Positions 1 to 16,064 are shown, numbered from the stretch's first letter. The stretch: 64,000 nucleotides of DNA from Diplonema japonicum (GCA_964019335.1 OZ025685.1:62001-126000); one strand, 5' to 3'. The notes: generated by a model not told the origin, from the letters alone. Made by a program: numbers and translations.

Positions 1-39
1 TCTCATAAATCTCGTTAAGCAATCGTCCGCGGTGGCAGA

Positions 40-111
40 TCTCCTATGGTGTAGTGGTTAGCACTCGGGACTCTGAATCCCGCGACCGCGGTTCGAATCC
101 GCGTAGGAGAA
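40..111 (+). tRNA. tRNA-Gln (anticodon CTG)
   Basis: Cloverleaf: acceptor TCTCCTA/TAGGAGA, D-arm GGTGTAGTGGTTAGCACT, anticodon arm CGGGA-CTCTGAA-TCCCG, T-arm CGCGG-TTCGAAT-CCGCG; followed by a T7 Pol III terminator. Confidence 0.93.
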
Positions 112-304
112 TTTTTTTCGGCCCTGAAACACCAGCTGCTAAACTGTCATCACCTCAACTAGCTCTGGTTTTGACACCAACGTTGCCACCCCAGCCTCTG
201 GCAAAAGGGCTAGGAAGAAGGCCACCAGAGCTGCATACACTGACGCCGCCGCACCTTGAGAAAAAAGAAAGAATCAGGGATTTGCAAAAATAAATAAAAT
301 GTTA

Positions 305-1189
305 CTAATTAATTATGCAAGCACAATGAGGTTCTCTACAGTGTATAAATTCAGTTTGCTGCTGTTGTTGCTGTTGCTGCTGTTGCTGTTCGTACCTCCT
401 GCTTCTGCTGTACAGTGATTTCCTAAGAGACTGCGCTTCTTCGCTTCTATCTCGCAGCCGCTGGTTGACTGCCTCGTTCTCTCTTTCAAGGTCCCGGATG
501 TGGTGATATTGTCGTTTCAGAGTCTCCTCCATCTGTTTGACACGCAAGTCATCTGAAGTACAGAGAGGCGACAGGATCTGAGGAGGGTTGTGGATTTCTG
601 TTTTCAGGTCACTTGAAGTGATATTGCTTGTCGAGTCGAAGGCACCTTCTGAACTATTGACTGCAAACCACACTTCGATTATGCAGGTGGCCTTGGGTGA
701 GAGAGTGACTTTCCCTTTCCGTCTGGTCGGGTGGTAGGCTTCTAGTACAACGTTATTTTTTGCAACTGTATGATAATATTTTTCAATAACGTTGTAGCAC
801 AGCAACTCGAAAACCAAAGTAACGGCTGGTCTCAGCTTTCCCTTTGCCGTGTACATAACATTCTTGCTAAAGGTATTCATCCCCTCCCACGTGAGTTTCA
901 CAACACGCCCTTCATGTTTCATTACAACTTGGCCCTCTGCCAGGGGTGCATTCAGCACTACTTCTTTCTTATGCTGGATCTTTATGGTGTATCTATTATA
1001 TGCTGTGTCGATGACGTTGTTGTTCAGCACTAGTTCACATGATTTGAGGAACAGAAAGGCAGTCGCCGGCATCTTAACTGCTTTGCTACTAGCACTCGAG
1101 ACAGCGGAAGGCGTTAGTGAGCAATACACCGGATCAGGTTCCCCTTCGCCTTCTAGAGTGGCCAGGGCCTCAGTGGTGAGGTAGGCCAT
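305..1189 (-). CDS. Hypothetical protein, C-terminal coiled coil and polyQ (294 aa)
   Basis: Long ATG-started ORF, co-oriented with neighbours, CAG acceptor 10 nt before the ATG. No family recognised. Confidence 0.75.
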   Translation of the reverse strand: MAYLTTEALATLEGEGEPDPVYCSLTPSAVSSASSKAVKMPATAFLFLKSCELVLNNNVIDTAYNRYTIKIQHKKEVVLNAPLAEGQVVMKHEGRVVKLTWEGMNTFSKNVMYTAKGKLRPAVTLVFELLCYNVIEKYYHTVAKNNVVLEAYHPTRRKGKVTLSPKATCIIEVWFAVNSSEGAFDSTSNITSSDLKTEIHNPPQILSPLCTSDDLRVKQMEETLKRQYHHIRDLERENEAVNQRLRDRSEEAQSLRKSLYSRSRRYEQQQQQQQQQQQTEFIHCREPHCACIIN

Positions 1190-1246
1190 TTGTGTAAACC
1201 TGCTGGTTGCAATAATGAAGAGAACAGACAGACAAATACGTGCGAT

Positions 1247-2068
1247 CTACTCACTCTTTGAGTCAACAAACTTTTGGAAAGCGCTGGCAGTCCTCCCACC
1301 GTAGTACTCGATCCCGGTTTTGTCGGTTTTTGTGAAGAACTGTGATAAACTTCTTTTTCTTTTTTTTTTTTTGTATTTTTATACCTTTAGTGTAGGGTAT
1401 CCATGCACGCTGTATTTCTGACCAACGGCCGTATGCTTGGCAGCATCCACTTCCGCGATGACAATGTCGGCATCGTCGGTCTGTGCTGCAAGGCGGACCC
1501 ATTCAGGCTCGAGGGCTTTACAATGCCCGCACCAGGGTGCGTAGAACTTGACAAAGACGTTCTTTGTGGGGTCGTTTATCACGCCTTCGGCATTAGCACC
1601 AAGTACCATCACCTGCCCCGGTTTATGTGGTTGAGCAACTTCGTCCTCTTCCTGCACAACAGAAACAGTTCCAAGCTCCACGCCGAGATAAGAGAGCAAG
1701 CTCTGCGTATCCCGACCACCTGTGTACTTCTTGAAAGTACCATCCTCCCTAATCAGCATGATAGAGGGAAAGCCCTTCACCCCGTACTTCTCAGCGATAC
1801 CTCCAGATCCTTGCTGTGTGGCGTCGAACTTTCCAATGTGAATGCCGTCCACTGTCTCTGCAGCAGTACCAAGTTCCTTCCACACAGGGACAAGCTTCTT
1901 GCACCACCCACACCATGGTGCATAGAATTCGATCAGCCAATCTTTGCCATCAACCTGTCCATTAAAGTTACCGCTTGTCAGTTCAGCAACGCCTTCTATC
2001 ACTGCCGATGGATCATCCCCGTAAACACTGACACACAGGAACAACAGAACAGCAAAGGTTTTCACCAT
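1247..2068 (-). CDS. Protein disulfide isomerase with two thioredoxin domains (exons 2068-1385, 1339-1247)
   Basis: Signal peptide; FYAPWCGWCK and FYAPWCGHCK motifs. The 45-nt GT..ACAG intron 1340-1384 restores YPTLK|FFTKTDKTGIEYYGGRTASAF..., completing the second Trx fold. Confidence 0.92.
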
Positions 2069-2108
2069 TTTAACCTTTTAACTCTGGCAGTTGTTCGGTA
2101 GAAAGGCA

Positions 2109-3248
2109 CTAATAACAAGCCCACGAAGGGCGAGGGCATGTGACCTTAAGGTCTACGGCGGATATTTCATAGTACACAGCATGTAGATAAATCATGGTGT
2201 CAGCACAAGGCGGGGGGAGCGTGTTTTCTTTTGATAATATGTTGTTAACCCAAGTACACTTCGGACACCAGTCCTTCCTGGTAGATTCTAAAATGGACCT
2301 GAGTGTTCCTTCTTCATTCTCCTGATACAGAACCGCTCCCGTCTCGGTTTTACCGCCATAGAGCTCGTCGTTAGAGATGGGGTACCCCATGCAGCCCAGG
2401 TGCACACGGATTTGGTGACGCAGCCCTGTGACAGGGAAAGCTGTGATTATCGACTCATCAGTTGCCTCCCGGTAGTGGAGGAGCTTGAACTTTGTGAGAG
2501 CATCTTTGAACTTGCTGCCCTTACCTGCCACTGCTTTATTGAGTTTGGTATCGAAGGTGATACTCTCAGAGCAGGACACGTCAGCTCCACAAGGGAAGCG
2601 TCCTCTCACCCTGGCCACGTACGATTTGACGGCTTCACGTTTGGCAAGCGCTTTCATTGCTGTCGTAAGCAATCCGCCACCCCGACTCATAATAAGAACA
2701 CCACCAACGGGTTTGTCAATGCGATGCACGAGGTGGAGTTTAGCTTTCCTGTTCTGCTTCTGAAGCATCTTCTCAGTAATCGTAACAATGTTGTTGCGGC
2801 CGCCTTCTGCATCGACACACGGGACCCCTGGCGGTTTGTTTACAACGAAGAACTTATCGTTGTCAAACAATAAGGCAGGTTCCTCGCCGGCTATGACTCG
2901 TTCATGAACGTGCTTGGTGATCTTGATCCTGTCTTGTTTCTCAACCACAAATTCATTGTCCACCCTGCAAAACCCCATTGCCAGCTCTGAAGTGTCATCT
3001 CGGCTTTTTTTCGATCTCCTTAAGCTCACCCTGCCCCCATCGACAACCCCTTTCCAGTACTCTCGAGCCTCTTCTATGTCTTGTTCACCTTTATGCAATC
3101 TAAAAACTTCGGCAAGCACTTCCGCTACTCTCATCTCGGCATATTTTTCCTTGACGGAATATTCTTGATCTTTTATGTAAGGTATCACGTACCGCAATCC
3201 ATTGACAATCACATAGTCACCTTCAACATAAGCACACTTTTTGTCCAT
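2109..3248 (-). CDS. RluA-family pseudouridine synthase (RPUSD2/Pus9-like)
   Basis: Motifs VVNKPPG, VHRIDK (catalytic Asp), K.YVARV.G, TGLRHQIRVHL..MGYPISNDELYG, IYLHA; N-terminal GLRYVIPY typical of the subfamily. Confidence 0.9.
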   Translation of the reverse strand: MDKKCAYVEGDYVIVNGLRYVIPYIKDQEYSVKEKYAEMRVAEVLAEVFRLHKGEQDIEEAREYWKGVVDGGRVSLRRSKKSRDDTSELAMGFCRVDNEFVVEKQDRIKITKHVHERVIAGEEPALLFDNDKFFVVNKPPGVPCVDAEGGRNNIVTITEKMLQKQNRKAKLHLVHRIDKPVGGVLIMSRGGGLLTTAMKALAKREAVKSYVARVRGRFPCGADVSCSESITFDTKLNKAVAGKGSKFKDALTKFKLLHYREATDESIITAFPVTGLRHQIRVHLGCMGYPISNDELYGGKTETGAVLYQENEEGTLRSILESTRKDWCPKCTWVNNILSKENTLPPPCADTMIYLHAVYYEISAVDLKVTCPRPSWACY

Positions 3249-3291
3249 TTTATTTGTCCTGTCTGGTTCTTGGGGGGGGGGGATAAAAAGA

Positions 3292-3363
3292 TTCCCCGGC
3301 CGGGAATTGAACCCGGGTCATCCGCGTGACAGGCGGATATACTGACCTCTATACTACCGAGGA
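3292..3363 (-). tRNA. tRNA-Asp (anticodon GTC)
   Basis: Reverse complement TCCTCGG TAGTATAGAGGTCAGTATA TCCGC-CTGTCAC-GCGGA TGAC CCGGG-TTCAATT-CCCGG CCGGGGA A, then TCTTTTT terminator. Confidence 0.93.
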
Positions 3364-3604
3364 GGACAATTCTTGTTCGTGGAAAGTATTTGATAATATA
3401 TCGATACAATAAAACATAGGGGGAGAGAAAAGAGAACAGAATAGTATGTTTTTTATTCAAATCATACTTCCTCATCACCTACATTGTGCTTGCCAGAGTT
3501 TTGAAAGGTTGTTTGAAAGGAATAAAAAGCGAAAATAGTAAAAAAGAGGTGAAGAAGGATAAATACTGCATACAAAAACAGAAAGTCGAATAAAAAGAAT
3601 AAAG

Positions 3605-4027
3605 GTGACTGACATCCTCAAGAGGAGCCTTCCCATGTACCAGGAATTAAGCAGAGGTTGCTTCCATGGTGTATCAGTCTATTACCTTTCTGGAGAACAG
3701 ATGGTTTTTTTGATGCACTTGTTCTTCATTGTGTCCCACAGTCTGGCAGTTCAGAGGCTGGCAACGGTCCTGCAAGCAGATGCTGCTGCAGTGTTCCACA
3801 AGTAGCAATCACAAGCCTTGCAGTCTGCCTGTGTCCTCACTGCTGTGCACTTCTTCTCCATGTACATCACCCATCCATCCACAGTCGCTGCTCACTGCAG
3901 AGCTCCCTGGGTTGGGTACCATGTCTGGACACTGAGTTCTCACAGTCCCAGGTGCAGTTCATTCTTGCACACGACTGTGTCTGTTGTCACCATGCACATT
4001 GTGACTGGCATGCACATGGGCATCTGA
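3605..4027 (+). pseudogene. Decayed coding-like segment of unknown origin
   Basis: Complex sequence without homopolymers; one frame runs ~140 codons with a single internal stop (ORFs 3605-3805 and 3818-4027 share a frame); TG/CA-rich and CG-poor. Confidence 0.3.
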
Positions 4028-4100
4028 AAAAACCGCAGCAGACCACAGACCAGAATCAAAGATATGATTGCACAGGACCAGCAGTAGAAGTAAATAGAAT

Positions 4101-4131
<31 letters not shown>

Positions 4132-5510
4132 CAGGAACAGAAAACAAAAAGAAAGGAAATAGTGTGAGAATTGAGATATTTAATGGGGTGAACAGGACAA
4201 ATGAAAAATAATAAGAAAAAGAAAAAAAGGGAAAAGAAAAGAACAAGTGCAAGATTATAAAATATGGATAAGAAGAGTTCCCCTGGCTGGGAGGAGGGAA
4301 AAAGAAAGAAGAGAGAATGGTCTGGCCAGCCTAAAAAAAGAAGAAGTTTATTTAAAAAAAAAAAAAAGAACAAAAACAAAAAATACACAAGGGTGAGAGG
4401 GTAGGTTTTAAATGATGAGAAGAGTTAACAGAAGGAAGCCAAAGAGAGCAGTAGTGAAAAAGTGAATTGACAAGGGGGGAAAGAGGGAGGAGAAGCAGAT
4501 GAAAGGGAAAAGAAACATGCAAGAGTGACACTGCCCCCTTTTTTTACCCTTTTTTTTTTTCTTTTTGCATTGCTTTTGAGTCCCCTCCAGAGTGGTGGAA
4601 AGGTGTTTGAGGATCTGTTTGAAGATGAAGATTTCCAGCCAGTAGGGTGCCAGGAAAGAAGTGATGCTCAACCATAGGCAGGTGCAGCAGCTGGAGCAAC
4701 ACAACCCAGGGTAACCAACATTCTGTGCTCATGCAGTTTGCTGCCAATTCATCACCCTGAGCATCTGCATTATGTTCTTCCAGGAGCTACCAGTGATGAC
4801 TGATGAGGAGGTCAACAGCAAACATATCTGATGTTTTTCTTATATTTTCATGTTATCCCCACCACCTGAAAAAGAAACTCCAATACCTGATAAAGGTTTT
4901 TTTTACCAACAGTCAGCACCCTGTACTCTGCACGATGTGCTGTTGCTAACCACTTTGTTCCTATCATAGTGAATTTTTTTTTTCTTCGTTTCTCATTGTT
5001 GTTGTTGTTGTCGTCTCTCAGTACCTGTGTAACATCTTTTCTTGTAGACATCTGTTTATACATTTGAACTCTGCAGCAAAAAAAAAGGGGGGGATGTGGT
5101 GTTGTGGTTGTATCTTCTGGTCAGTCTGGCATAATTGGGTCGAAATTCATGCCAGATCCAGTCTGGTCCAGTCTAGTCTAGTCCTAATTAAGATTCATGC
5201 ATCACTGCTGACATTCCACTTTTCTGACCACCCACACATGTCCAGCACTTCTTACACTTGGTGATTAAGGAAATGACATGGAATGCAGAAGCTGTGGTGC
5301 ACCCCCTGTCATCAAATAGACAGTTCTTTTTTTTTTTTTTTTTAAATAAACCTCTTTTTTTTTGGCTGGCCAAGCCCTCTCCTTTCTTTTTCTCCCTCCC
5401 TGGCCTTGGGTAGGGGTGGGTGGGCCCAGGTGGGTGAAAGTGAAGAGGAGTGAAAAAAAGGGTACACAAGTTCTTGTGCAGGGTGCTGCCAACACTGGCC
5501 TCTTTAACTC

Positions 5511-5673
5511 ATATATTTATCTCCTATATATTATTTTCAGGTGGGGGGAGGAATAACATGAAAATATGTGCAACAAACAGGCAGTGCAATGCAGGGGTTG
5601 AGCTGTACATTGCACATTAGGGGCACAGTGCTGAAAGCAAGGAACCAATCTGTTTACACAGGTTGTATAAACA
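5511..5673. repeat. Inverted repeat arm A (partner 8935-9094)
   Basis: ~160 bp near-identical reverse complement of 8935-9094. Confidence 0.9.
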
Positions 5674-5693
5674 TACACCTCCTCTTATATGTT

Positions 5694-6150
5694 TGATGAC
5701 CAGCCTGATGATGGAATGGAGACTATGAAACAAGCAGTGACAATGACTGGACACTACTGGGTCCACTACACAAAAGAGGGTAAGAAGTGAGATCTCAGAG
5801 CAGACAGGTGCCATAAGGCAAAAACAAAGGATGGCACCCCAGCCTCATCTTGTACAAGAAGCACAAGACCAAGGAAGCAGAGGAGGGCCACCCAAGGCAC
5901 AACAGAGGACATGGAACCTCCCCAACACAGCAGCAACAGCACCAGCAGCAAAGACAGTAGTGACATAAAGAAGAAGACATCAGTATCTCCTCCCCCCCCC
6001 TCCTTCTCCCCTTCCTGCTGTTCTACTTTGGGTGGATCAAGTGTCTGAAGAAACAACAGATTTTTCTGGTGACTCTTCAGTGTACTAGAAATGTACATGA
6101 TGCACCCCTGGAACAGATAATGGAAGGAAACACTCATGTGCACCACCTGA
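5694..6150 (+). pseudogene. Decayed ORF remnant with in-frame stops, mostly TGA
   Basis: Reads DDQPDDGMETMKQAVTMTGHYWVHYTKEGKK*DLRADRC...SSV*RNNRFFW*LFSVLEMY; TGA stops fit CGA->TGA decay. Confidence 0.35.
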
Positions 6151-6247
6151 GTAGCTCAGGAAGTGGGTTTGTGGACTGAGGAAGATGACAGTCACCACAA
6201 TAACCAGGGGTGGGTCATTCTGTTCCCTTCCACCAAACTGAAAAGTC

Positions 6248-6380
6248 AGAACTTGGCAGAACGGTGGAACCGGAACTTGGTGGAACATGGTGGAACTGGC
6301 AGAACATGGTGGAACTGGTGGAACTGGCAGACAGGTGGAACATGGTGGAACATGGTGGAACATGGTGGAACTGGTGGAAC
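6248..6380. repeat. Minisatellite, 9-10 bp unit (TGGTGGAAC[A])
   Basis: More than 10 degenerate tandem copies. Confidence 0.9.
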
Positions 6381-6786
6381 AGGGAATTCCTTATTTAATT
6401 TTTTTTTTCTTTCCCCCCTTTTTTCCTGCATCATCAAGGTTGAAAGTGGTGACTATATAGAAGAGCACCATGAAGAGAAAGAGGAAGAAAAAGTTTGTGA
6501 GCAGCAGCCTTATCTAATCCCATTTACCCAAACAACCCAACTCGTTTACCCCAGAAAAAGAAGAGGAACAAAAAAAGAGAACAAGTGTTAAGAAGAGTGC
6601 CACAAAGAGAAAAAAAAAAAGAAAGGAACAAAGAAAAAAGAAAAGAAAGAGAAAAGAAACAGTGAGCAGCAACCTTATTTAACAATACCCAAATATTACC
6701 CATGTTTTACCAACAACCCCACCCCCAGAAGGAAAAAAAAAAAAGAAGAAAGAAGAAAAGAAAAAAAAAAAAATAAACATAACCCC

Positions 6787-7018
6787 TCAGGAGCTACTGG
6801 TGATGACCAATGAGGAGGTCAACAGTGAACAACACATCTGATGTTTTTTCATGCTATCCCCACCACCTTTGGAATAATATACAAGAGTTAAAGGAGGCTG
6901 GTGTTGGCAGTGCCCTGCACAAGAACTGTCTACTTGATTACAGGGGGTGCACCACAGCCAAGTTGTAGCTTCTTCTGCATTCTGCATCGTGTCCTTAATC
7001 ACTGTGGCCGAGTTGTAG
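6787..7018. repeat. Inverted repeat arm B (partner 9529-9760)
   Basis: ~230 bp near-identical reverse complement; ORFs 6787-7002(-) and 9458-9760(+) translate almost identically. Confidence 0.92.
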
Positions 7019-7363
7019 TTTCTTCTGTGTTCTGTGTCATGTCCTTAATGTGTGCGGTGTTCAGCTCAACCCTAGCTGGGGCGCCCCAGGAAACCAAGAT
7101 TCTGCACTCATGTGGTTTGCTTGGTGATGACCGATGAGGAGGTCAACAGTGAACACATCTGATGTTTTTCTTATATTTTCATGTTATCCCCACCACCTGA
7201 AAAAGAAGATAAAAGTTTTTTTTTTTTTTTTTTTTTCTTTGTTTCTCGTTGTTGTTGTTGTTGTTGTCTCTCAGTACCTGTGTAACATCTTTTCTTGTAG
7301 ACATCTGTTTATATGTTTGAACTCTGCAGCAAAAGGGGGGATGTGGTGTTGTGGTTGTATCTT

Positions 7364-7481
7364 GTCTGGTCTGGTTCAGTCCAGTCTGGTCTGGTCCAGT
7401 CTGGTCAGTCTGGTCAGTCTGGCATAATTGGGTCGAAATTCATGCTGGATCCTGTCTGGTCTGGTCCAGTCCAGTCTAGTC
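7364..7481. repeat. Pentamer microsatellite (GTCTG/GTCCA) inside a direct repeat of ~4975-5200
   Basis: Tandem GTCTG/GTCCA/GTCTA; flanks match 4975-5200. Confidence 0.8.
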
Positions 7482-8096
7482 CTAATTAGGATTCACCCAT
7501 CACTGGCCTTGGTAAGGGCACTGCTGGGGGAAAAAAAATTTTTTTTTGCAAAAAAATAAAAAAAAAGTCCATTTTGAGGGTGCCTGAGTGCCATGTGACC
7601 CCAGAAAAAAAAATTTTTTTTTCACCACCAAGGCTGTTCCCTCCATTCCCCCATTCCCTTGGTTCCCCCATTCCCTTTCGTTCCCCCATTCCCCCAAATT
7701 CCCTCAAGGGAATCGTTCCCTTCCCTCTGTTCCCCCAGATTCCCTCAAATTCCCTCAAGGGAATGACCCAACACTGCAATAACTCATACTAGACTTCAAA
7801 AACTGGGAAAGGGGTAGATAAGTAGAGATAAGTAAACAAGGATGTTCCAGAACTTTTTTTTTATTTTAAATAAACCTCTTTTTTTTTAGGCTGGCCAGAC
7901 CACTCTCTTCTTTCTTTTTCCCTCCTCCCAGCCAGGGGGCCCTGTGCAGCATAGTGGTACATGTTATAAAACACGTGCTGTGTTGTGCACCCTGTGTTGC
8001 ATACATCATGTGTGTCGAAAATTTGCAGTGTTGGGGTGGTTTGTGGGCCAGACCTCAGACCACCAGTCTGGCCAACATTGCCCATCCAACCCTTTT

Positions 8097-8128
<32 letters not shown>

Positions 8129-8386
8129 GCATTGTACTTTTCTTGCAAAGGCCTCTTTTTAATATTTTTTTCAAAGCAGGTCTCCAAACCCCCTGACATT
8201 TTTTTAAATTTTTTTTTTTTTTTACATAGTCACAACAAGGTAGTATGAGCCTTGCCTCACATCCCACCCAAACCTAGGACCTCTTTTTTTGAACCTTTGA
8301 AACCAAAAGTACCAAAAAAATGCAAGCCCCAGCCTAAATTTGGGCCTTTGTGACACAAAAAACACAAAGAAATTTTTTGGTCCCAA

Positions 8387-8528
8387 GAGTCCCCTGAGTC
8401 CCCTCCAGACCCCTGAGTCCCCTGAGTCCCTTGAGTCCCTCCAGTCCCCTGAGTCCCCTGAGTCCCCTCCAGACCCCTGAAAATTTCAGGGGACTCCTGT
8501 CCTGTCCCTTGGAGTCCCCTGAGTCCCT
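8387..8528. repeat. Minisatellite, 9 bp unit GAGTCCCCT
   Basis: About 10 copies with interruptions. Confidence 0.9.
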
Positions 8529-9108
8529 CAAGGGTCTGGACCAACACTGGGTAGAGTGGTTACCATGCTCACCTGTCAGGCCAGTGTTGGTCAGTCCCAT
8601 CCCATCCCCTAAAACGGAATACAGACTCAACAGGACTCACAGGACTCTCCCCAACACTGTCATTATTTTTGATAGTTTTGCAACTTTTTTTTTTTTTTTT
8701 TGTTTCCCTTTGGAAAAAAAAAAAAAAAAATGGGGAAAAAAAAAGAGAAAAAAATCCTTGATTTTTTTTTGACATACATGATGTGTTTACCTTTTTTTTT
8801 TTTCCCTTCTTTTTTTCTTGTCTTCTCACATTTTTTCACACACCTAAGCCAAGCTGTTGTTTCTGCTTTTGCATCAAATGTTGTATTTGGATGTAATAGA
8901 AAAGGGGGAAATAATAAATAATATGTAGGGTGTTTGTTTATACAACCTGTGTAAACAGATTGGTTCCTTGCTTTCAGCACTGTGCCCCTAATGTGCAATG
9001 TACAGCTCAACCCCTGCATTGCACTGCCTGTTTGTTGCACATATTTCATGTTATTCCCCCCCCCACCTGAAAATAATATATAGGAGATAAATATAGGTTA
9101 AAGGAGGC

Positions 9109-9400
9109 TGGTTGTAGCTTCTTCTGCATTCCATGTCGTTTCCTTAATCACCATGGCCAGGATGTAGCTTCTTCTGTGTTCCACATCATGCCCTTAATCA
9201 CTGCAGTCAGGTTGTAACTTCTTGCATTCCATGTCATTTCCTTAACCACCATGGCCAGGTTGTAGCTTCTTCTGCATTCTGCATCGTGTCCTTAATCACC
9301 ATGGCTGAGTTGTAGCTTGTAGTTGTTCCATGTCATTTCCTTAATCACAATGGCTGGGTTGTAGCTTCTTCTGTGTTCTGTGTCATGTCCTTAATGTGTG
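9109..9400. repeat. Tandem array of ~50 bp units (about 6 copies)
   Basis: Unit GTTGTAGCTTCTTCTGCATTCCATGTCATTTCCTTAATCACCATGGCCAG; further copies near 6960-7050 and inverted at 9480-9590 and 10600-10666. Confidence 0.88.
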
Positions 9401-10666
9401 TGGTGTTCAGCTCAACCCCAGCCAGGGTGCCCCAGGTAACTAAGATTCTGCACTTGTGTGGTTTGCTCAGTGATGACACAACAACCCAGCTATGGTGATC
9501 AAGGAAATGACATGGAATACAGAAAAAGCTACAACTCAGCCACAATGATTAAGGACACGACACAGAATGCAGAAGAAGCTACAACTTGGCTGTGGTGCAC
9601 CCCCTGTAATCAAGTAGACAGTTCTTGTGCAGGGCACTGCCAACACCAGCCTCCTTTAACTCTTGTATATTATTCCAAAGGTGGTGGGGATAGCATGAAA
9701 AAACATCAGATGTGTTGTTCGCTGTTGACCTCCTCATCGGTCATCACCAGTAGCTCCTGAGTGGAAGAACATAATGCAGATGCTCAGGGTGACAAACAGG
9801 CAGCAAACTGCACAAGCGCCGAATCTTGGTTACCTGGGACACTCTGGCTGGGGTTGAGCTGTACACCACACATTAAAAATATGACACGGAATGCAGAAGA
9901 AGCTGTGCAGGGTGCCACCAACACCGGCCTCTTTTAACTCATATATATATATCATTCAGGTGGTGGGGATAACATGGAAATAGAAGAACCCATCCATTAG
10001 GTTCTACAGATTCTTAGACCACAAAGGAGGTGTTGCACAAATGGCAGAAGTGAAGAAGCAGAGCAATGAGCTAGCAGGTACCTCCTTACTTTGGAAGAGC
10101 AAGGTACCAAAGCATAACAGAGATGAGATTTGGGCACAAATACAGGACTTCATTATTGAAGGGGGTAGTATCTCTGAAGATATTACCTTTCTTGGAGATC
10201 CAAGTTTTTACCCTAGAGAGTTCAAAGGTGAAGCTGAACATAAAAAGTACACCCTCAACCCCCCTCTTACACACATAGTTAAGTGTTCTTATCTGAATCT
10301 GGCACCTGGAATTGAAAATTTTAGTACCGTTTACCCTTTCCTTGCACCTTCCTATGGTTGCTGCCCTTTTTTTGAGTTTTTAAAGCAACAACGAAAATGG
10401 GGGGGTACCGTAGATAGGCTCTGGGCCTTTAGGGGTTATCTTTCCTTTTCAGGTAGGGATAACATGAAAATATAAGAAAAACATCAGATGTGTTGTTTGC
10501 TGTTGACCTCCTCATCGGTCATCACTGAGCAAACCACATGAGCGCAGAATCTTGGTTACCCAGGACGCCCTGGCTGGGGTTGAGCTGAACACCGCAAATA
10601 TTAAGGGCATGATGCGGAACGCAGAAGAAGCTACAACCCGGCCGTGGTGATTAAGGACACGACGCA

Positions 10667-11392
10667 TTTTCTTTGGGGAAGGTCTCTGGACGTGGTACTG
10701 TCGATCCTGGTGCAAGCGCACCGTGTAGACCCGCTGTGTGCCGTGGTGTACAGCACCTTGATGATGCTGAGGAGGTGCTGGCTGAGGCGAGACAGGGCAA
10801 TGGTGGCATGGACGCAGTTGACGCAGGCATACGGGACTTCAGGGCAGGTGAAGCCGAGGGGGGTCGTAGGAAATGTGCTCCTGAGGTGGCTCCCGGCGAT
10901 CGGTTGGAAGTGGGTGAGGCTGGCGAGCTGCGGTGGGCGGAGGAAGGAACGTCCGTGTCGGCGATCGAGCTGGCGATTGACTTCGAGTGCTACAAAGAAG
11001 ACGTTGGGGTCAACGTCAACACGACGATTGACATCGACAAGAAGGCGGTGAGGATCAAGCGGATCCTGGATACGCTACAAGCGACATGGATGAGGGAGAA
11101 GAGGAGACGCGCTTTTCCGGCGCAGTCATGCAAGAACGTGAGATCACTACGATCCATTGGCCGCGACCACGTCGTTGGCTTTGATAGGAGGGCCCTGTTT
11201 GCATCGGGACTGACGGCGACCAAGCTGAAAGGACTGAGAGAAGATTACCGGAAGGAAAAGATTGGAAGATATAAACGACAGCTAGGCACTACGGTGGGTA
11301 GCAGGGAACGACCCTAAAAGGGGAGCATCATAAGGTAGGCACGCCACCGCGGCGGGCCGTTGCTAACCACTTCGTTCCTATCATAGTGAATT
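10667..11392 (+). mobile_element. Truncated, internally deleted non-LTR retrotransposon-like 3' remnant
   Basis: Two coding-like segments in different frames (RSLDVVLSILVQAHRVDP...GVVGNVLLRWLPAIGWKW; LRWAEEGTSVSAIELAIDFE...) resemble post-RT and C-terminal regions of protist LINE ORFs from recollection. The 3' end recurs at 4939-4975 and 37141-37240. No RT core present. Confidence 0.55.
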
Positions 11393-11815
11393 CTTTTTTT
11401 CCCCTAACCCTGTACATACAGCTTAGCCACTCCTTATACTTCCCTGAATTGAGGTGGTGCAGAGTCTTGGTTTGTACATGACACCACACCTGCGCTCCAC
11501 AGCATCATCGGAGTTTAATTTTTGGTTCTTCATTCTGTTTTCAAATGATTTAGGATTTTCCTTAGAGTAATTTTTATTTTGATCAATCCTACTCCTATCA
11601 GACATAATGTCACTGTCAATCTCCTCCTTCTTGCCATCATCTGCAAACGCTTGGTGTTACCCTGCATGTCTCAAATGTGTGTTGACCCTTTTTTATTTTG
11701 AATTCCCCTCTTTCCCCTTTTCTCTTTTTTCTTCTTCTATTTCTTCCTTTCTTTAATGCGTTGTGAAACATTGCAATCTCTTAAGCTTCCAACAGGCTCT
11801 TAAAAACAAAAGAAA

Positions 11816-12523
11816 ATGAAAACCCTTTTGCTGCTGTTGGTACTCCTCGTCTGCTCGTGCGAAGGTATGTTCGGCAAAGGGAGTGCAGTGCAGGAACTCA
11901 CACCGAAGACCATTGGCAAGTTTATGTCGGGTCACAAGCCTGCAATGCTGCTCTTGTATGCACCATGGTGTGGGCACTGCAAGTCCATCCACCCAGAGTT
12001 TGAAAAGCTTGCAAAGTCGGTGAAAGGCATTGTGAAGATAGGTGCCGTAGATGCTGACAAGTACAAGGAGATTGGCGGGCAGTACCAAGTCAAGGGATTC
12101 CCTACCATCAAAACCTTCGCTATGACCGACAAGAAGAGCAAGACACCCCTCGACTACCAACAGGAGCGCTCATTCAAGGCGATGAAGGCCACAGCTCTGT
12201 CCCTCGTGTCCTCAAAGAACGTAAAGAAGCCCACCAAGACCGCCGATATCACGAGCAAGCCACACGTCATCCTCTTCACAAAGAAGAAGGCCTCGCCGCC
12301 TCTGTTCAGTGTTGTCTCTGCCTCCCCGAAGCTCAAGGAGAAGTACACCTTCTACATGATCACAGAGAGCAACAAGCTCAAGGACGCCTACGCCCCGCCC
12401 ACGTGGCCTTCCGTCGGCATCTTCGTCGAGGGCGAGGAACCCAAATACCTTGAGATGGAAAAGGGTGTCGAGTACCAGAAGCTCGCAGAATTCATCCTTG
12501 GCGACGAAAGCAAGAAAGAATAA
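11816..12523 (+). CDS. PDI-family thioredoxin protein (PDIA6/Mpd1-like, one active Trx domain plus b-type domain)
   Basis: Signal peptide; LYAPWCGHCK; VKGFPTIK. Confidence 0.92.
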   Translation: MKTLLLLLVLLVCSCEGMFGKGSAVQELTPKTIGKFMSGHKPAMLLLYAPWCGHCKSIHPEFEKLAKSVKGIVKIGAVDADKYKEIGGQYQVKGFPTIKTFAMTDKKSKTPLDYQQERSFKAMKATALSLVSSKNVKKPTKTADITSKPHVILFTKKKASPPLFSVVSASPKLKEKYTFYMITESNKLKDAYAPPTWPSVGIFVEGEEPKYLEMEKGVEYQKLAEFILGDESKKE

Positions 12524-12741
12524 AAACGGACAGCCCCGAAATTACTTTTACCCTTTACCCCCCTTTACCCTTTTGCCCCTTTACCTCTGGCTGTATTTTG
12601 AACGCCTCAAGCAAAGTCTGAACACAGCTACTGCGCTTGCAAAATACAGCGAAGTGTTGAGTGTCGTTGAGGCTTACCCCTTCAACGTTGATGTTGTTCT
12701 GCCTGTCATATTATTCGTTCATCCACACACACCACAGGACG

Positions 12742-13797
12742 ATGTCGAAGAAGAACCACATTGTGAACGGGATCGACACGACCCAGGGTCCCCCCTGGCT
12801 GTGTCACGCGGGGCTCCCCTCCGATGGGAGCGTGATGGGGGCCAAGGAGTTGGAGGTGTTCGGTGACTTCATGAGCCCCACGAAGCGGGAAGTGGAAATG
12901 AAGGCGGGGGTAAGGGAAGTTGTGCAGAGGCATGTGAGGCAGTACGTGTCTGGCGATGCAACTGTGAAGCTTGTGGGCGCGGCTGCCTGCGGCATCGAGA
13001 GCTATGCCAACGACACTGAAATGGTGATCGAGCTGCCTACTACAAAGGACGAGGTTGATGTGCTGCGTGTGGTAGAGCACCTGTGCACAGACTTCGAGTG
13101 CGACTTAGACGAAGAGGCCGCACGGTTGACGATGAAAATACCTGACGAGCAGATCACAGTGCAGCTCACGTGCGATACTTACAACTCGAAGAAGCGACGC
13201 GAGGCAAGCATTATCCGCAAGCACCTTGCCGCCAACAAAGGCACTGCCAAGGTGGTGCGCATCATCAGGTCTATCATCAACCAGATGAAGCTAGTGAACC
13301 CTATCGGGCTCTCCTACGATGCTGTCACCGTTCTTGTCATCGCCTTTCTGGAGCACATGTGGCGCGGCGAGGACCTGCTGTGGACATTGAGGAGCTTCTT
13401 CTACTTCTACTCCAACTTCGAGTTCGGGAAGTACTCAGTGAGCATAACGTCTGAGGGGCCAAAGTTCCTCCCCAAGACACACCAAAACCAGATGGTCGTG
13501 CTTCACCCCATGGACGGAGGAAACCTCTGTGAGAAGACCATTGTGGGGCCCATCACGGCTACCTTTAAGTATGTGCTCCTGAGCATTGCTAAGTGGGACA
13601 CAAGTGCGTCCCTCTCGCGTGGGAAGTCGCTGCTGTTTAACCTCCTTGCCCACAAAGACTTGTGGCCCAGGTACATGAAGCTGAAAGGCATCCCTATAGA
13701 ACCCACCGTTCCGAAGCCTGCTGCCGTTGCCAGCACCAAGCCAGCTCCCGAAGAAGATCCCTCCCTCGCAGAGGCGTCTGGCCGGTGCGAAGCGTGA
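12742..13797 (+). CDS. TRF4/PAP2-like nucleotidyltransferase-fold protein, catalytically degenerate
   Basis: MSPTKREVEMK helix, VKLVGAAACG..YANDTEMVI (GS...DxD equivalent), GLSYDAVTVLVIAFL, FFYFYSNFEF, VLHPMDGGNL (PAP-associated-like). ATG follows a CA-rich ACAG acceptor. Confidence 0.72.
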   Translation: MSKKNHIVNGIDTTQGPPWLCHAGLPSDGSVMGAKELEVFGDFMSPTKREVEMKAGVREVVQRHVRQYVSGDATVKLVGAAACGIESYANDTEMVIELPTTKDEVDVLRVVEHLCTDFECDLDEEAARLTMKIPDEQITVQLTCDTYNSKKRREASIIRKHLAANKGTAKVVRIIRSIINQMKLVNPIGLSYDAVTVLVIAFLEHMWRGEDLLWTLRSFFYFYSNFEFGKYSVSITSEGPKFLPKTHQNQMVVLHPMDGGNLCEKTIVGPITATFKYVLLSIAKWDTSASLSRGKSLLFNLLAHKDLWPRYMKLKGIPIEPTVPKPAAVASTKPAPEEDPSLAEASGRCEA

Positions 13798-14171
13798 AAC
13801 AGACTGTCCAGTATCTTTTTTTTTTCTTTATACTTTTTTATCCCCCTTCCCCCACCCCACCATTCCCTTCTTTTTTTCAGCAGGGCGCCGCCAACACCGG
13901 CCTCCTTTAACTCATATATTTTTTTTCTCTCTTTTTCTTTTTTGGCATTTTGCTTCGCCGGATTTATTTCTGCCCCCCCCCCTTTTTTTTCTTTCTTGCG
14001 CAGCATGCCCAAAAGGTTCTCCTTTGGTCCTCGTTTTGGTCCTTTTTTTATTTCTTCTTTTCCCCCTTTTAAGTACTTACTGCGTGTGGCATTGTGACAT
14101 GTAGCCCCAAGGCAATAAGGTTAGATACCACCCTTTCTTTTCTTTTTGTCTCATCCCCCCTTTTCTTTGAC

Positions 14172-14205
<34 letters not shown>

Positions 14206-16064
14206 CGCATAAGGGACTTGCAGTCTATATCTTCTCCCTTCGGTTTGTTCTCCCCTCATTTTTCTTTTTTTCTCTTTTTTTTTTACTAACTTTTCCCCCT
14301 TTCCTTCTTCCTCCCTCTTTCTTTGGACATCTTATTTGTTCAAAATTGTTCCAAATCAATAAAAAGCGATTTTAAAAAATACTCCCGCAGTAAAACGAAA
14401 AAGAAGGGGGAATACAAAATTCTCTTGCTGACTCTTCCCTTTCCCCCAAACATTTTCTTCCTTTTCATTCTTCCCTCCCACTAACAAAATTTTTGCTACT
14501 GCAAGAGTAAAGGTAAGAGACCCGTCCCCCCCCCTTTATTTTCAAAGAATAAACCCCCTCCTTTGCCCCTTCTTTTTCTTCTTTATTTTCTTCTCCCCCC
14601 CCCCCCCCTTTTTATTCACGCTTTACAAAGATAAAAATGAAGCAAAAATCCTTTCCCCCTCCCCTCCTTTCGGTCTCCGCTCTCTTTCTCTTCTCTCCTC
14701 TCCCTCCTTCACTCCCCTCAACTGCATTCTATTCTACGAAAAAATTGAGAAAAAAAAAAAAGAAAAAAAAAAAAAGAGAGAACGAACCACCACGAAATAT
14801 CCCGCCACTCGTCAGCTTAGCTGTCTTCTTGCATCTTTTTGTTACCTTTTAAAACATAATTCGGTGTATCTGTTTCCTTTATTCCCTGCTGGGGCAGAGC
14901 GCAGAGGAGTCACCATCTTCGCGCTTGCTCCATCCCATGTTCCCCTTTTAGTCCACAGAGGAACCAAATTACTGAGAAGGGTCACTTAGACAACAAGAAT
15001 ACAGAGAGGGCTTCCATGCCCGAGGCATGGTGCAGCAGCCTAGTGACACGTGCATACGTGTGGCGCTATTTATTATATTATTTTACAGGAAAAAGTAGAA
15101 TTTTTCAAGAAAAAAAAAAAGAAAGAAGAAAAAAAAAAAAAACCATCAGAATGCAGACCTGTTACACATCCTTTTCTTTCGGTAGGTGATTTTTTTATTT
15201 TTTATTTTTTTTATTTTTACATTTAAATCTACATTTTGGAGGAAAAAGAAACGGAAAAAAATAAAAAGAAAATTAAATACAGGTTTTTGTTTTCTTTTTC
15301 TTTTTCACCCTCTTTTTTTCTCCCTCCCCCCTTCTTTTATTCTTTTTCTTTCCCTCCATATCTTCCCCGCATCTCTTCTTCTCCTTTTCCCTACGTGGGT
15401 GGGGTGGATTTAAAAAAAAGGAAATGTAAAAAGAAAAAAAAATGGGAATAACTGAGCGGACGAGGGCGAAGTGGTGGGACTTCTCCAAGGGAATGTCTTC
15501 CCTCCTTCCCTCTTCTCTCCCCTCCCCCAATTTCTCACTTTTTCTTTCCTTTCTCTTTTGGTCCTCTCTCGGTACCCTCAGAGACTCCTTGTTCTTTCTT
15601 TAACAAAAGAATGCAGCAAAAAAAAAAAAAAAAAAAAGTGGCAACATTTTTCATGTTGCTAGTCCTTCGTGAGGGAGAGATTGTGGTTCCTGTTGCACTG
15701 GAGGCCTCGCAAGTGCAAGCTTTTCTTCTTTTTTAAAATTTGGTCTCGCTTGCCATGGCAGCTTGTGCATCTTGGATGAGTGTGGCATGGCATAACGTGT
15801 AGGTTGTGCAGCAACCTGGTCTCCTTCTTATGTGATCTCATCGCGCTTCTGGTTCACTCCTCTAGTCCTTTGTTCCTCTGGACAGTAGCAGCAACAGTGC
15901 TGCCCCCCCCCTCCTTTTTTTCTACATCCAACCCACTCATTTTTATTCCATTCCTTTTTATTTCATTCATTTCATTCAGGCCGCCGTCCCTTCACTGTCT
16001 CACAGGAGCTACTAACTATCTAGCCCACTAGCTACACGTACTCAACTACACTTATATTTCTAAT

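What the first reader, a model, noticed from the sequence alone, without database searches (positions are those of the whole stretch)
3500..10666. Domain-restricted CpG->TpG/CpA erasure in repeats: signature of repeat-targeted 5mC or RIP-like silencing
Seen: one module reads CAGGGCGCCGCCAACACCGGCC outside the domain (13881). Inside it reads GGTGCTGCCAACACTGG (5482), GGCACTGCCAACACCAG (~9633) and GGTGCCACCAACACCGG (9911). Every substitution is CG->TG or CG->CA, and different copies took different outcomes. The retroelement tail CCGTTGCTAACCACTTCGTTCC (11357) likewise becomes CTGTTGCTAACCACTTTGTTCC (4940). Genes in the same window are CpG-rich. Established: this pattern results from deamination of symmetric 5mCpG. 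Inference: a heavily methylated or actively mutagenised heterochromatin domain sits at the strand switch. That would be notable in a euglenozoan-like genome, since kinetoplastids mark such regions with base J and have little 5mC.
Basis: partly seen in the sequence, partly recalled or inferred. Interest (0 to 1): 0.85.

Follow-up and report, generated by a model that had tools for sequence, protein, structure and literature searches.

The report
CpG-decayed repeat island at strand switch
A 7-kb patch of dead repeats, lying where two gene arrays of the marine protist Diplonema japonicum point away from each other, has lost about 80-90% of its CG dinucleotides to TG/CA; this is the mutational scar expected from local cytosine methylation, and the same kind of island occurs about once per chromosome, which makes these islands candidate centromeres.

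Summary
Window 3400-10500 holds 38 CpGs against about 217 expected for GC-matched DNA of the same window (o/e 0.12 versus 0.75), and both edges are sharp.

I compared repeat copies inside such domains with CpG-normal copies elsewhere in the genome:
- About 79% of CpGs are changed, to TG (42%) or CA (38%).
- Transversions are about 1%, and non-CpG C>T is only 2.5%.
- All NCG contexts decay alike, both strands decay equally, and different copies took different outcomes.
- A single-copy piece inside the domain is CpG-free too.
- Equally diverged copies of the same repeats just outside the domain keep their CpGs.

The process is therefore tied to the domain, not triggered by repeats, and it is not RIP.

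The genome (Diplonema japonicum) encodes an intact DNMT5 in one 2140-aa open frame (C5-methyltransferase plus SNF2 ATPase).

The island sits at a divergent strand switch. Its repeat modules form a single cluster in 57 of the 58 chromosome-scale contigs seen, usually near one end.

The best reading is a DNMT5-type CpG-methylated heterochromatin island with deamination decay, and possibly the centromere. 5mC itself was not measured.

The scan found the same phenomenon before on other DNA of this genome (71 notes mention CpG, and several follow-ups reached the same reading).

The parts
3400..10500 (.). CpG-depleted domain: a scrambled nest of decayed repeat modules plus a little single-copy DNA
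   Evidence: 38 CpGs against 217 expected at the GC-matched background; o/e 0.12. About 81% of relatives' CpGs are changed to TG/CA.
3292..3363 (-). tRNA-Asp(GTC) gene directly at the left edge of the domain
   Evidence: ARAGORN and Rfam at 63 bits. CpG density is normal up to 3402 and depleted beyond. No tRNA gene was found at the other islands sampled, so this is not a general boundary element.
10450..10670 (+). 215-nt repeat module that straddles the right edge; CpG-rich from 10516 onward
   Evidence: 86-91% identical copies in at least 35 contigs; CpG positions.
10501..11400 (.). CpG-normal continuation of the repeat cluster, outside the decayed domain
   Evidence: CpG o/e 0.64-1.25. High-copy word depth in all four runs laid. 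Holds the intact versions of modules that are decayed inside the domain.
9985..10237 (.). Single-copy piece inside the domain with no CpG at all
   Evidence: No other match in the genome. 0 CpG against 7.4 expected. Present as an exact contig at single-copy depth in 4 runs from 3 studies.
10238..10439 (+). Copy of a young dispersed repeat of about 205 nt from the chromosome arms
   Evidence: 94-96% identical copies on many contigs. In the 35 nt tested, the arm copies have the same TG/CA as this copy, so that stretch says nothing about decay.
9106..9395 (+). Decayed tandem array of 50/98-nt units
   Evidence: TRF. The CpG-bearing version of the same unit is in C36 and at window 10592-10666.
7364..7470 (+). 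Decayed microsatellite, (TGGTC/CAGTC)n, derived from (CGGTC)n
   Evidence: TRF in the window, against a (CGGTC)23 array in the CpG-normal C36 copy. A second decayed copy is at 5120-5180.
5512..5679 (+). Left arm of an inverted duplicate, 98-99% identical to 8929-9095; both arms are CpG-free, so the copying happened after the decay
   Evidence: Inverted repeats I4 and I16; no CpG in either arm.
8929..9095 (-). Right arm of that inverted duplicate
6783..7049 (+). Arm of a 267-nt inverted repeat, 95% identical to 9498-9764
   Evidence: I1
2109..3248 (-). First gene of the leftward array (pseudouridine synthase)
   Evidence: Pfam PF00849. The long ORFs to the left, in window 1-3300 and in the preceding 10 kb, are on the minus strand; plus-strand ORFs there overlap longer minus-strand ones.
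11816..12523 (+). First recognisable gene of the rightward array (thioredoxin domain)
   Evidence: Pfam PF00085. From 11.8 to 62 kb nearly every long ORF is on the plus strand, and most minus-strand ones overlap longer plus-strand ORFs.

Best explanation
Window 3400-10500 is a chromatin domain whose CpGs were, and probably still are, symmetrically methylated, most likely maintained by the genome's DNMT5. Deamination of 5mC then turned CpG into TpG on one strand or CpA on the other, site by site and independently in each repeat copy.

Shown here: the mutational pattern, its restriction to the domain, its recurrence about once per chromosome, the divergent gene arrays, and the intact DNMT5 gene.

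Inferred: that 5mC is the cause, that DNMT5 is the enzyme, and that the domain is silent heterochromatin.

The domain is defined by position, not by repeat homology. It fills the gene-free gap from which the two gene arrays of this chromosome diverge.
For: - CpG o/e is 0.12 against 0.75 outside, with sharp edges.
- Where a CpG-normal copy has CpG, the depleted copy has T for C in 41.7% and A for G in 37.5% of cases. Transversions are about 1%, non-CpG C>T is 2.5%, G>A 2.6%, A>G 1.7% and T>C 2.0%.
- Per cytosine this is at least a 30-fold excess at CpG. In normal-normal pairs the excess is about 5-fold.
- Non-CpG divergence of depleted-normal pairs equals that of normal-normal pairs (about 3%), so the depleted copies are not simply older.
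- TG and CA outcomes number 9231 and 9189. Of 1341 sites with two or more decayed copies, 1082 show both outcomes, and 43% of pairs disagree. The decay therefore happened in place and independently.
- ACG, CCG, GCG and TCG decay alike.
- The single-copy piece 9985-10237 has 0 CpG.
- DNMT5: Pfam DNA_methylase and SNF2 domains lie in one 2140-aa open frame on C108. The match to Cryptococcus DNMT5 (PDB 7r76) has E = 5e-143, with the catalytic motifs conserved.
- The same repeats and the same depletion occur in clusters on other contigs.
- Genes diverge from the island on C38, C71 and C6.
- Independent sequencing runs hold the domain's unique piece at single-copy depth.
Against: - No direct measurement of 5mC exists (no bisulfite, EM-seq, nanopore or HiFi-kinetics data were available), so the link to methylation rests on the known mutational signature.
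- No SRA/UHRF1-type domain and no Pre-SET (SUV39-type) domain was found in six-frame searches. These are weak negatives, but the cofactors that recruit DNMT5 in Cryptococcus are not evident here.
- No canonical de novo enzyme (DNMT3 type) was seen among the five PF00145 hits. How newly inserted DNA in the island becomes methylated is therefore unexplained.
- Silencing was not tested: no RNA run was on record for this stretch.
Confidence: 0.8

Rival explanations
1. Relic scar: the domain was CpG-methylated in the past but is no longer methylated, and the depletion is only history.
For: Sequence alone cannot date the process. About 12% of expected CpGs survive. Inverted duplicates that are 98-99% identical share the decayed state, so much of the decay predates recent rearrangements.
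Against: DNMT5 is kept as an uninterrupted 2140-aa frame with conserved catalytic motifs. The per-cytosine excess at CpG is at least 30-fold at only about 3% background divergence, which points to a fast and recent process.
Confidence: 0.1
2. A CpG-directed mutational process without 5mC, for example a locally acting cytosine deaminase or mutagenesis linked to a replication origin or transcription start, erased the CpGs.
For: Methylation was not measured. The domain lies at a strand switch, where unusual DNA transactions are expected.
Against: Known deaminases prefer the base 5' of the C (TC, WRC), not the 3' G. Here all four NCG contexts decay alike and both strands decay equally, as expected for a symmetric CpG mark. 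A CpG-specific methylase gene is present.
Confidence: 0.06
3. RIP-like genome defence: duplicated sequences are recognised by homology and hypermutated.
For: The affected DNA is mostly repeats. CpG-biased RIP-like patterns (TpCpG) have been described in some basidiomycetes (my own knowledge, not checked here).
Against: Copies of the same repeats outside the domain are multi-copy and equally diverged, yet keep their CpGs. Single-copy DNA inside the domain is CpG-free. There is no CpA or TpCpG preference, and non-CpG C>T is barely raised. No RID/Masc-like gene stood out among the five PF00145 hits, which are DNMT5, three DNMT2-like genes and one M.HhaI-like gene.
Confidence: 0.02
4. The depleted copies descend from a CpG-poor master element, or are simply much older, or the domain is an assembly or contamination artefact.
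For: CpG o/e near 0.1 resembles vertebrate DNA. Some decayed states are shared between copies: 57% of pairs agree.
Against: Both TG and CA outcomes occur at 81% of sites with two or more decayed copies. Non-CpG divergence is the same as between normal copies. The domain is built of this genome's own repeats. Its unique piece is an exact, single-copy-depth contig in four runs from three studies.
Confidence: 0.02

Closest known systems
DNMT5-maintained CpG methylation of transposon-rich centromeres and subtelomeres in Cryptococcus neoformans (Catania et al., bioRxiv 10.1101/149385; structure PDB 7r76)
   Same: The enzyme family is the same: C5-MTase plus SNF2 in one protein, E = 5e-143 to the Cryptococcus enzyme. 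The implied methylation is CpG-only and symmetric. The targets are gene-free nests of dead transposable elements, about one major block per chromosome.
   Different: Methylation is not measured here. No SRA/UHRF1 or Pre-SET domain was detected. The islands are small (about 4-10 kb), sit at a divergent strand switch between long co-oriented gene arrays, and belong to a lineage that also makes base J (PMC10161547).
Vertebrate-type CpG depletion through 5mC deamination
   Same: The dinucleotide signature is the same: CpG deficit with TpG and CpA excess, transitions only, both strands.
   Different: Here it is confined to one island of a few kb per chromosome. The rest of the genome has CpG o/e near 0.75.
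Fungal RIP (Neurospora RID-dependent; basidiomycete TpCpG hypermutation)
   Same: C>T and G>A transitions in repeated DNA.
   Different: Here the context is any NCG, not CpA or TCG. The process depends on position, not homology, and it also affects single-copy DNA.
Kinetoplastid divergent strand-switch regions and strand-switch centromeres or origins (Trypanosoma, Leishmania)
   Same: A gene-free gap with degenerate mobile elements from which two co-oriented gene arrays diverge, and about one special locus per chromosome.
   Different: From my own knowledge, kinetoplastids mark such regions with histone variants and base J and have at most traces of 5mC. A CpG-decay footprint and a DNMT5 gene are not part of that picture. 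L. donovani is reported to lack C-5 DNA methylation (PMC7463849, title only).

Membership tests
5mC-deamination (CpG decay) domain | Losses are CpG>TpG/CpA transitions, far above non-CpG C>T | tested here: met
   41.7% C>T plus 37.5% G>A at CpG, against 2.5% at non-CpG C, with about 1% transversions. The window domain alone gives 43% plus 37.5% against 3.3-3.6%.
5mC-deamination (CpG decay) domain | Both strands affected equally (symmetric mark) | tested here: met
   TG:CA = 9231:9189.
5mC-deamination (CpG decay) domain | 5-methylcytosine present at the residual CpGs | not testable with these tools
   No bisulfite, EM-seq, nanopore or kinetics data; the runs found are kept as contigs only.
DNMT5-type methylation system | A gene that joins a C5-MTase domain and a C-terminal SNF2 ATPase in one protein, with intact catalytic motifs | tested here: met
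   C108: MTase at 75311-75988(-) and SNF2 at 72110-73159(-) lie in one 2140-aa open frame. E = 5e-143 to Cryptococcus DNMT5. The motifs CSGTE, GTxCxD(F/Y)S, ILENV and AGNAMT are conserved.
DNMT5-type methylation system | Recruiting cofactors as in Cryptococcus (UHRF1-type SRA reader, H3K9 methylation by a SUV39-type enzyme) | tested here: inconclusive
   No PF02182 and no PF05033 hit in six-frame searches. For Pre-SET the controls were silent too, so the negative carries little weight.
Fungal RIP | Mutation triggered by sequence duplication, wherever the copies lie | tested here: not met
   Multi-copy modules outside the domain keep their CpGs at equal divergence. Single-copy DNA inside the domain is depleted.
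Fungal RIP | C>T preference at CpA (ascomycetes) or TpCpG (basidiomycetes) | tested here: not met
   CpA C>T is 3.8%, against 2.4% in the control. ACG, CCG, GCG and TCG decay by 34-44% each.
Regional centromere | Exactly one such locus per chromosome | tested here: met
   The island's repeat modules form one cluster in 57 of 58 contigs seen; C66 has two. About 14 collisions would be expected if the clusters fell at random on 118 chromosomes. Caveat: only the best 22-40 candidates of each search were scored, and islands without these repeats would be missed.
Regional centromere | Bound by the centromeric histone or kinetochore; islands cluster in Hi-C maps | not testable with these tools
   No ChIP or Hi-C matrices were available. 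A CENP-A candidate with nuclear foci exists in a related diplonemid (PMC11633173).
Divergent strand-switch region | Genes on the two sides point away from the gap over long distances | tested here: met
   C38: minus-strand genes for at least 13 kb on the left and plus-strand genes for 50 kb on the right. The same polarity holds at the C71 and C6 islands.

The most novel reading that the evidence does not exclude
The CpG-decayed islands, one per chromosome and mostly close to one telomere, are the centromeres of diplonemid chromosomes (and perhaps also their replication origins or the start regions of both gene arrays). On this reading they are marked epigenetically by DNMT5-maintained 5mC, in a lineage otherwise known for base J. 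They would be the first centromeric DNA identified in a group whose kinetochore is thought to be of an unknown third type.
Probability: 0.35. Interest if true: 0.85.

Novelty: new member of a known kind. Interest (0 to 1): 0.66.

Why it matters
DNA methylation in Euglenozoa has so far been a matter of gene catalogues. DNMT homologues are noted in D. papillatum (PMC10161547) and DNMT5 in euglenozoans (PMC12344493). Kinetoplastids are taken to have little or none, and I found no diplonemid methylome and no report of CpG-decay domains.

The sequence itself now says that CpG methylation has acted in this lineage, and it says exactly where: in one small island per chromosome, at the point from which the gene arrays diverge.

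This gives precise coordinates for a methylome test. It also gives candidate loci for the unknown centromeres of diplonemids, whose kinetochore proteins could not be identified (PMC11633173). CENP-A ChIP, or Hi-C clustering analysis of the existing Hi-C runs, could settle the centromere question directly.

Tried and rejected
- Host or vertebrate contamination, or a chimeric assembly: rejected. The domain is made of the genome's own repeats, and its unique piece is at single-copy depth in four runs from three studies.
- 'Older copies' and 'CpG-poor master copy': rejected by equal non-CpG divergence and by the mixed TG/CA outcomes.
- tRNA genes as general boundary elements: the tRNA-Asp gene abuts the left edge here, but no tRNA gene was found in 47 loci from other islands.
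- Using the young dispersed 205-nt repeat at 10238-10439 as a clock: the 35-nt probe showed that arm copies have the same TG/CA, so it was uninformative. Further copies could not be fetched.
There is therefore no full scan of CpG o/e along whole chromosomes, no lengths for about half of the contigs, and no N-terminus of DNMT5.
- RNA evidence for silencing: no RNA run on record holds the stretch, and Logan contigs cannot give expression levels.
- Coding capacity of the island: ORFs at 3658-4167, 8663-9049, 10041-10475 and 10673-11317 have no Pfam match. One ORF in the C36 cluster has a weak, sub-threshold DUF659 (hAT-type) hit.
- Rfam finds only the two tRNAs in window 1-16000.
- SRA and Pre-SET searches were negative.

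Full report
**What the window is.** The window is G000:C38:62001-126000 of a 62.5-Mb assembly in 132 contigs. Earlier notes of this scan name the organism as Diplonema japonicum. The size and the chromosome count fit the published genome note for strain YPF1604: 62.3 Mb, 118 chromosome-scale scaffolds, built from PacBio HiFi and Hi-C (PMC13598402). C38 is 581,588 bases long, so the finding lies 65-72 kb from one end of a chromosome-scale contig.

**The observation.**
- Per-kb CpG o/e falls from about 0.75 to 0.04-0.19 between 4 and 10 kb and returns to 0.63-0.79 beyond.
- At 250-nt resolution the left edge lies between 3400 and 3500 and the right edge near 10500.
- Window 3400-10500 has 38 CpGs. 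That compares with 324 expected from base composition, and with 217 expected at the o/e of the 48 GC-matched 500-nt bins elsewhere in the window (Poisson P about 6e-51).
- Twelve of the 14 domain bins lie below the lowest matched bin outside, and all 14 lie below its 5th percentile (Mann-Whitney P = 1e-8).
- TpG and CpA are in excess inside the domain (1.35 and 1.31, against 1.13 and 1.09 outside).

**The substitution spectrum.** I pooled 257 kb of this genome, made of the window plus loci from other repeat clusters. I labelled each base 'depleted' (CpG o/e below 0.25 in a 600-nt window) or 'normal' (above 0.5). I then paired every depleted base with its best-scoring normal relative.
- Where the normal copy has CpG, the depleted copy has T for the C in 41.7% and A for the G in 37.5% of cases. 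Transversions are about 1%.
- At non-CpG sites the differences are 2.5% (C>T), 2.6% (G>A), 1.7% (A>G) and 2.0% (T>C). These are the same as between two normal copies.
- The depleted copies are therefore not older. They differ only at CpG, by at least 30-fold per cytosine. Between normal copies the CpG excess is about 5-fold.
- For the window's own domain, 113 CpG sites give 43% C>T and 37.5% G>A, against 3.3-3.6% at non-CpG C/G.
- ACG, CCG, GCG and TCG decay alike (34-44% per strand). CpA shows no RIP-like excess, at 3.8% against 2.4%.

One caveat applies. The depleted class was chosen by low CpG, so the size of the CpG loss is partly built into the selection. The type of change, the strand symmetry, the lack of any non-CpG excess and the equal background divergence are not affected by this.

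**Decay in place, copy by copy.**
- TG and CA outcomes are equal in number (9231 and 9189).
- Of 1341 ancestral CpG sites with two or more decayed copies, 1082 show both outcomes, and 43% of copy pairs disagree. Fully independent decay would give 50%.
- Some sharing comes from copying after the decay. For example, the arms 5512-5679 and 8929-9095 are 98-99% identical and both lack CpG.
- A microsatellite that reads (CGGTC)23 in a CpG-normal copy on C36 reads (TGGTC/CAGTC)n at window 7364-7470.

**The domain, not the repeat, is the target.**
- The repeat cluster continues to about 11400, but from 10510 its CpG density is normal or high.
- Other clusters also hold CpG-normal stretches of the same modules next to depleted ones, for example C36:111.5-117 kb.
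- Conversely, window 9985-10237 has no other copy in the genome, has no CpG where 7.4 are expected, and is an exact contig at single-copy depth in four runs from three studies.
- That last result also rules out an assembly artefact or foreign DNA.

**Genome-wide pattern.**
- The island's modules recur in clusters of about 5-10 kb. The best-scoring places of three searches fall on 58 contigs, and 57 of them show a single cluster. C66 has two clusters 50 kb apart.
- Random placement on 118 chromosomes would give about 14 contigs with two clusters.
- Most of the clusters I could read contain CpG-depleted stretches of 1 to more than 5 kb. The 74 kb of C38 that I hold contain only this one.
- For 25 contigs of known length, the median distance of the cluster to the nearer end is about 35 kb. 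The islands are mid-contig only on C1, C11 and C33.
- Only the best 22-40 candidates of each search were scored, and I could not scan whole chromosomes, so 'one per chromosome' is well supported but not proven.

**Setting.**
- To the left of the island the long ORFs are on the minus strand, in window 1-3300 and in the preceding 10 kb; the few plus-strand ORFs there overlap longer minus-strand ones.
- To the right, from 11.8 to 62 kb, nearly all long ORFs are on the plus strand, and most minus-strand ones overlap longer plus-strand ORFs.
- The flanking genes are ordinary: pseudouridine synthase and thioredoxin-domain proteins on both sides, then a nucleotidyltransferase-like protein and an RRM protein.
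- The islands on C71 and C6 show the same divergent polarity.
- A tRNA-Asp(GTC) gene abuts the left edge here. No tRNA gene was found at the other islands.

**The enzyme.** Five places in the genome match Pfam DNA_methylase.
- One place (C108) matches Cryptococcus neoformans DNMT5 (PDB 7r76) at E = 5e-143 over 550 residues, with the SAM-binding, catalytic-cysteine, ENV and target-recognition motifs conserved. It shares one 2140-aa open frame with an SNF2 ATPase domain. This is the DNMT5 architecture.
- Three places are DNMT2-like, that is tRNA methylases.
- One place is an M.HhaI-like bacterial-type enzyme in a host-like locus.
- No DNMT1- or DNMT3-like hit appeared, and neither did an SRA or a Pre-SET domain. 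The last two are weak negatives.

**Literature.** DNMT homologues and base-J genes are noted for D. papillatum without any CpG or centromere analysis (PMC10161547). DNMT5 with SNF2 is listed for euglenozoans (PMC12344493). I found no diplonemid methylome and no paper that joins DNMT5 and diplonemids. Diplonemid centromeric DNA is unknown. A CENP-A candidate forms nuclear foci, and the rest of the kinetochore is unidentified (PMC11633173).

**Reading.** The most likely mechanism is CpG methylation confined to this island and maintained by DNMT5, with spontaneous or enzyme-assisted deamination turning 5mCpG into TpG/CpA (confidence 0.8).
- Shown: the spectrum, the symmetry, the independence between copies, the restriction to the domain, the recurrence, the divergent arrays and the intact DNMT5 gene.
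- Inferred: that 5mC is the cause, that DNMT5 is the writer, and that the island is silent.
- Open: what recruits methylation, how newly inserted DNA becomes methylated without an obvious de novo enzyme, and whether the island is the centromere, an origin, the start region of both arrays, or only the one place where dead transposons can pile up.

**Relation to earlier notes of the scan.** Seventy-one notes on this genome mention CpG. Follow-ups on other contigs reached the same reading: CpG desert at a divergent strand switch, one island per chromosome, DNMT5. I found DNMT5, the spectrum and the one-cluster-per-contig pattern before reading those notes, and I tested them on my own data. The idea is therefore a repeat within the scan and not independent evidence.

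Noticed in passing
L031:1042-2547 (+) = G000:C74, Pfam match at 154656-155504: A 502-aa ORF with a bacterial-type C5 DNA methylase domain, closest to M.HhaI (E = 3e-38). It sits in a host-like locus (GC about 50%) next to an ORF with a cyclin domain. It may be an orphan, horizontally acquired DNMT and a possible de novo enzyme.
   Followed up: partly
L032 (C10:360309-361340), L033 (C36:98772-99809), L034 (C11:562567-563571): Three DNMT2-like paralogues (E = 1e-70, 2e-64 and 5e-48 to DNMT2/TRDMT1 structures), an unusual number for one genome. The C36 copy lies about 7 kb from that chromosome's repeat cluster.
   Followed up: partly
window 1379-2068 (-) and 11816-12523 (+): Thioredoxin-domain ORFs on both sides of the island, in opposite orientation. 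This may be an old inverted duplication across the strand switch, or a coincidence.
   Followed up: no
G000:C66:419255-424789 and 469479-474536: The only contig seen with two clusters of the island repeats, 50 kb apart, with identical scores for one module. This may be a segmental duplication, a chromosome fusion or an assembly join.
   Followed up: no
L072:4130-5161 (-) = G000:C36:112130-113161: A 343-aa ORF in the CpG-normal part of the C36 cluster has a weak DUF659 (hAT transposase-associated) match, E = 3.6e-6 and below Pfam's cut-off. Part of the island repeats may derive from a hAT-type DNA transposon.
   Followed up: no
window 10238-10439; copies e.g. G000:C38:178789-178993 and C38:243995-244203: A young dispersed repeat of about 205 nt (94-96% identical copies). 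Its 35-nt probe matches 88 places with at most one mismatch, spread over the chromosome arms. In other copies the element continues further 5' (loose ends at 10238).
   Followed up: partly
G000:C1:1-384, C3:999806-999965, C4:1-328: The 8-nt unit GCAAACCC forms arrays at contig ends. A 32-nt four-unit probe matches 2204 times forward and 3364 times reverse, and 0 times in the control. This agrees with earlier notes on an unusual telomere repeat.
   Followed up: partly
window 10041-10475 (+): A 144-aa ATG ORF runs from the single-copy CpG-free piece into the dispersed repeat. It has no Pfam match and is probably not a gene.
   Followed up: partly
window 40-111 (+): A tRNA-Gln(CTG) gene lies 3.2 kb from the tRNA-Asp gene.
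   Followed up: no
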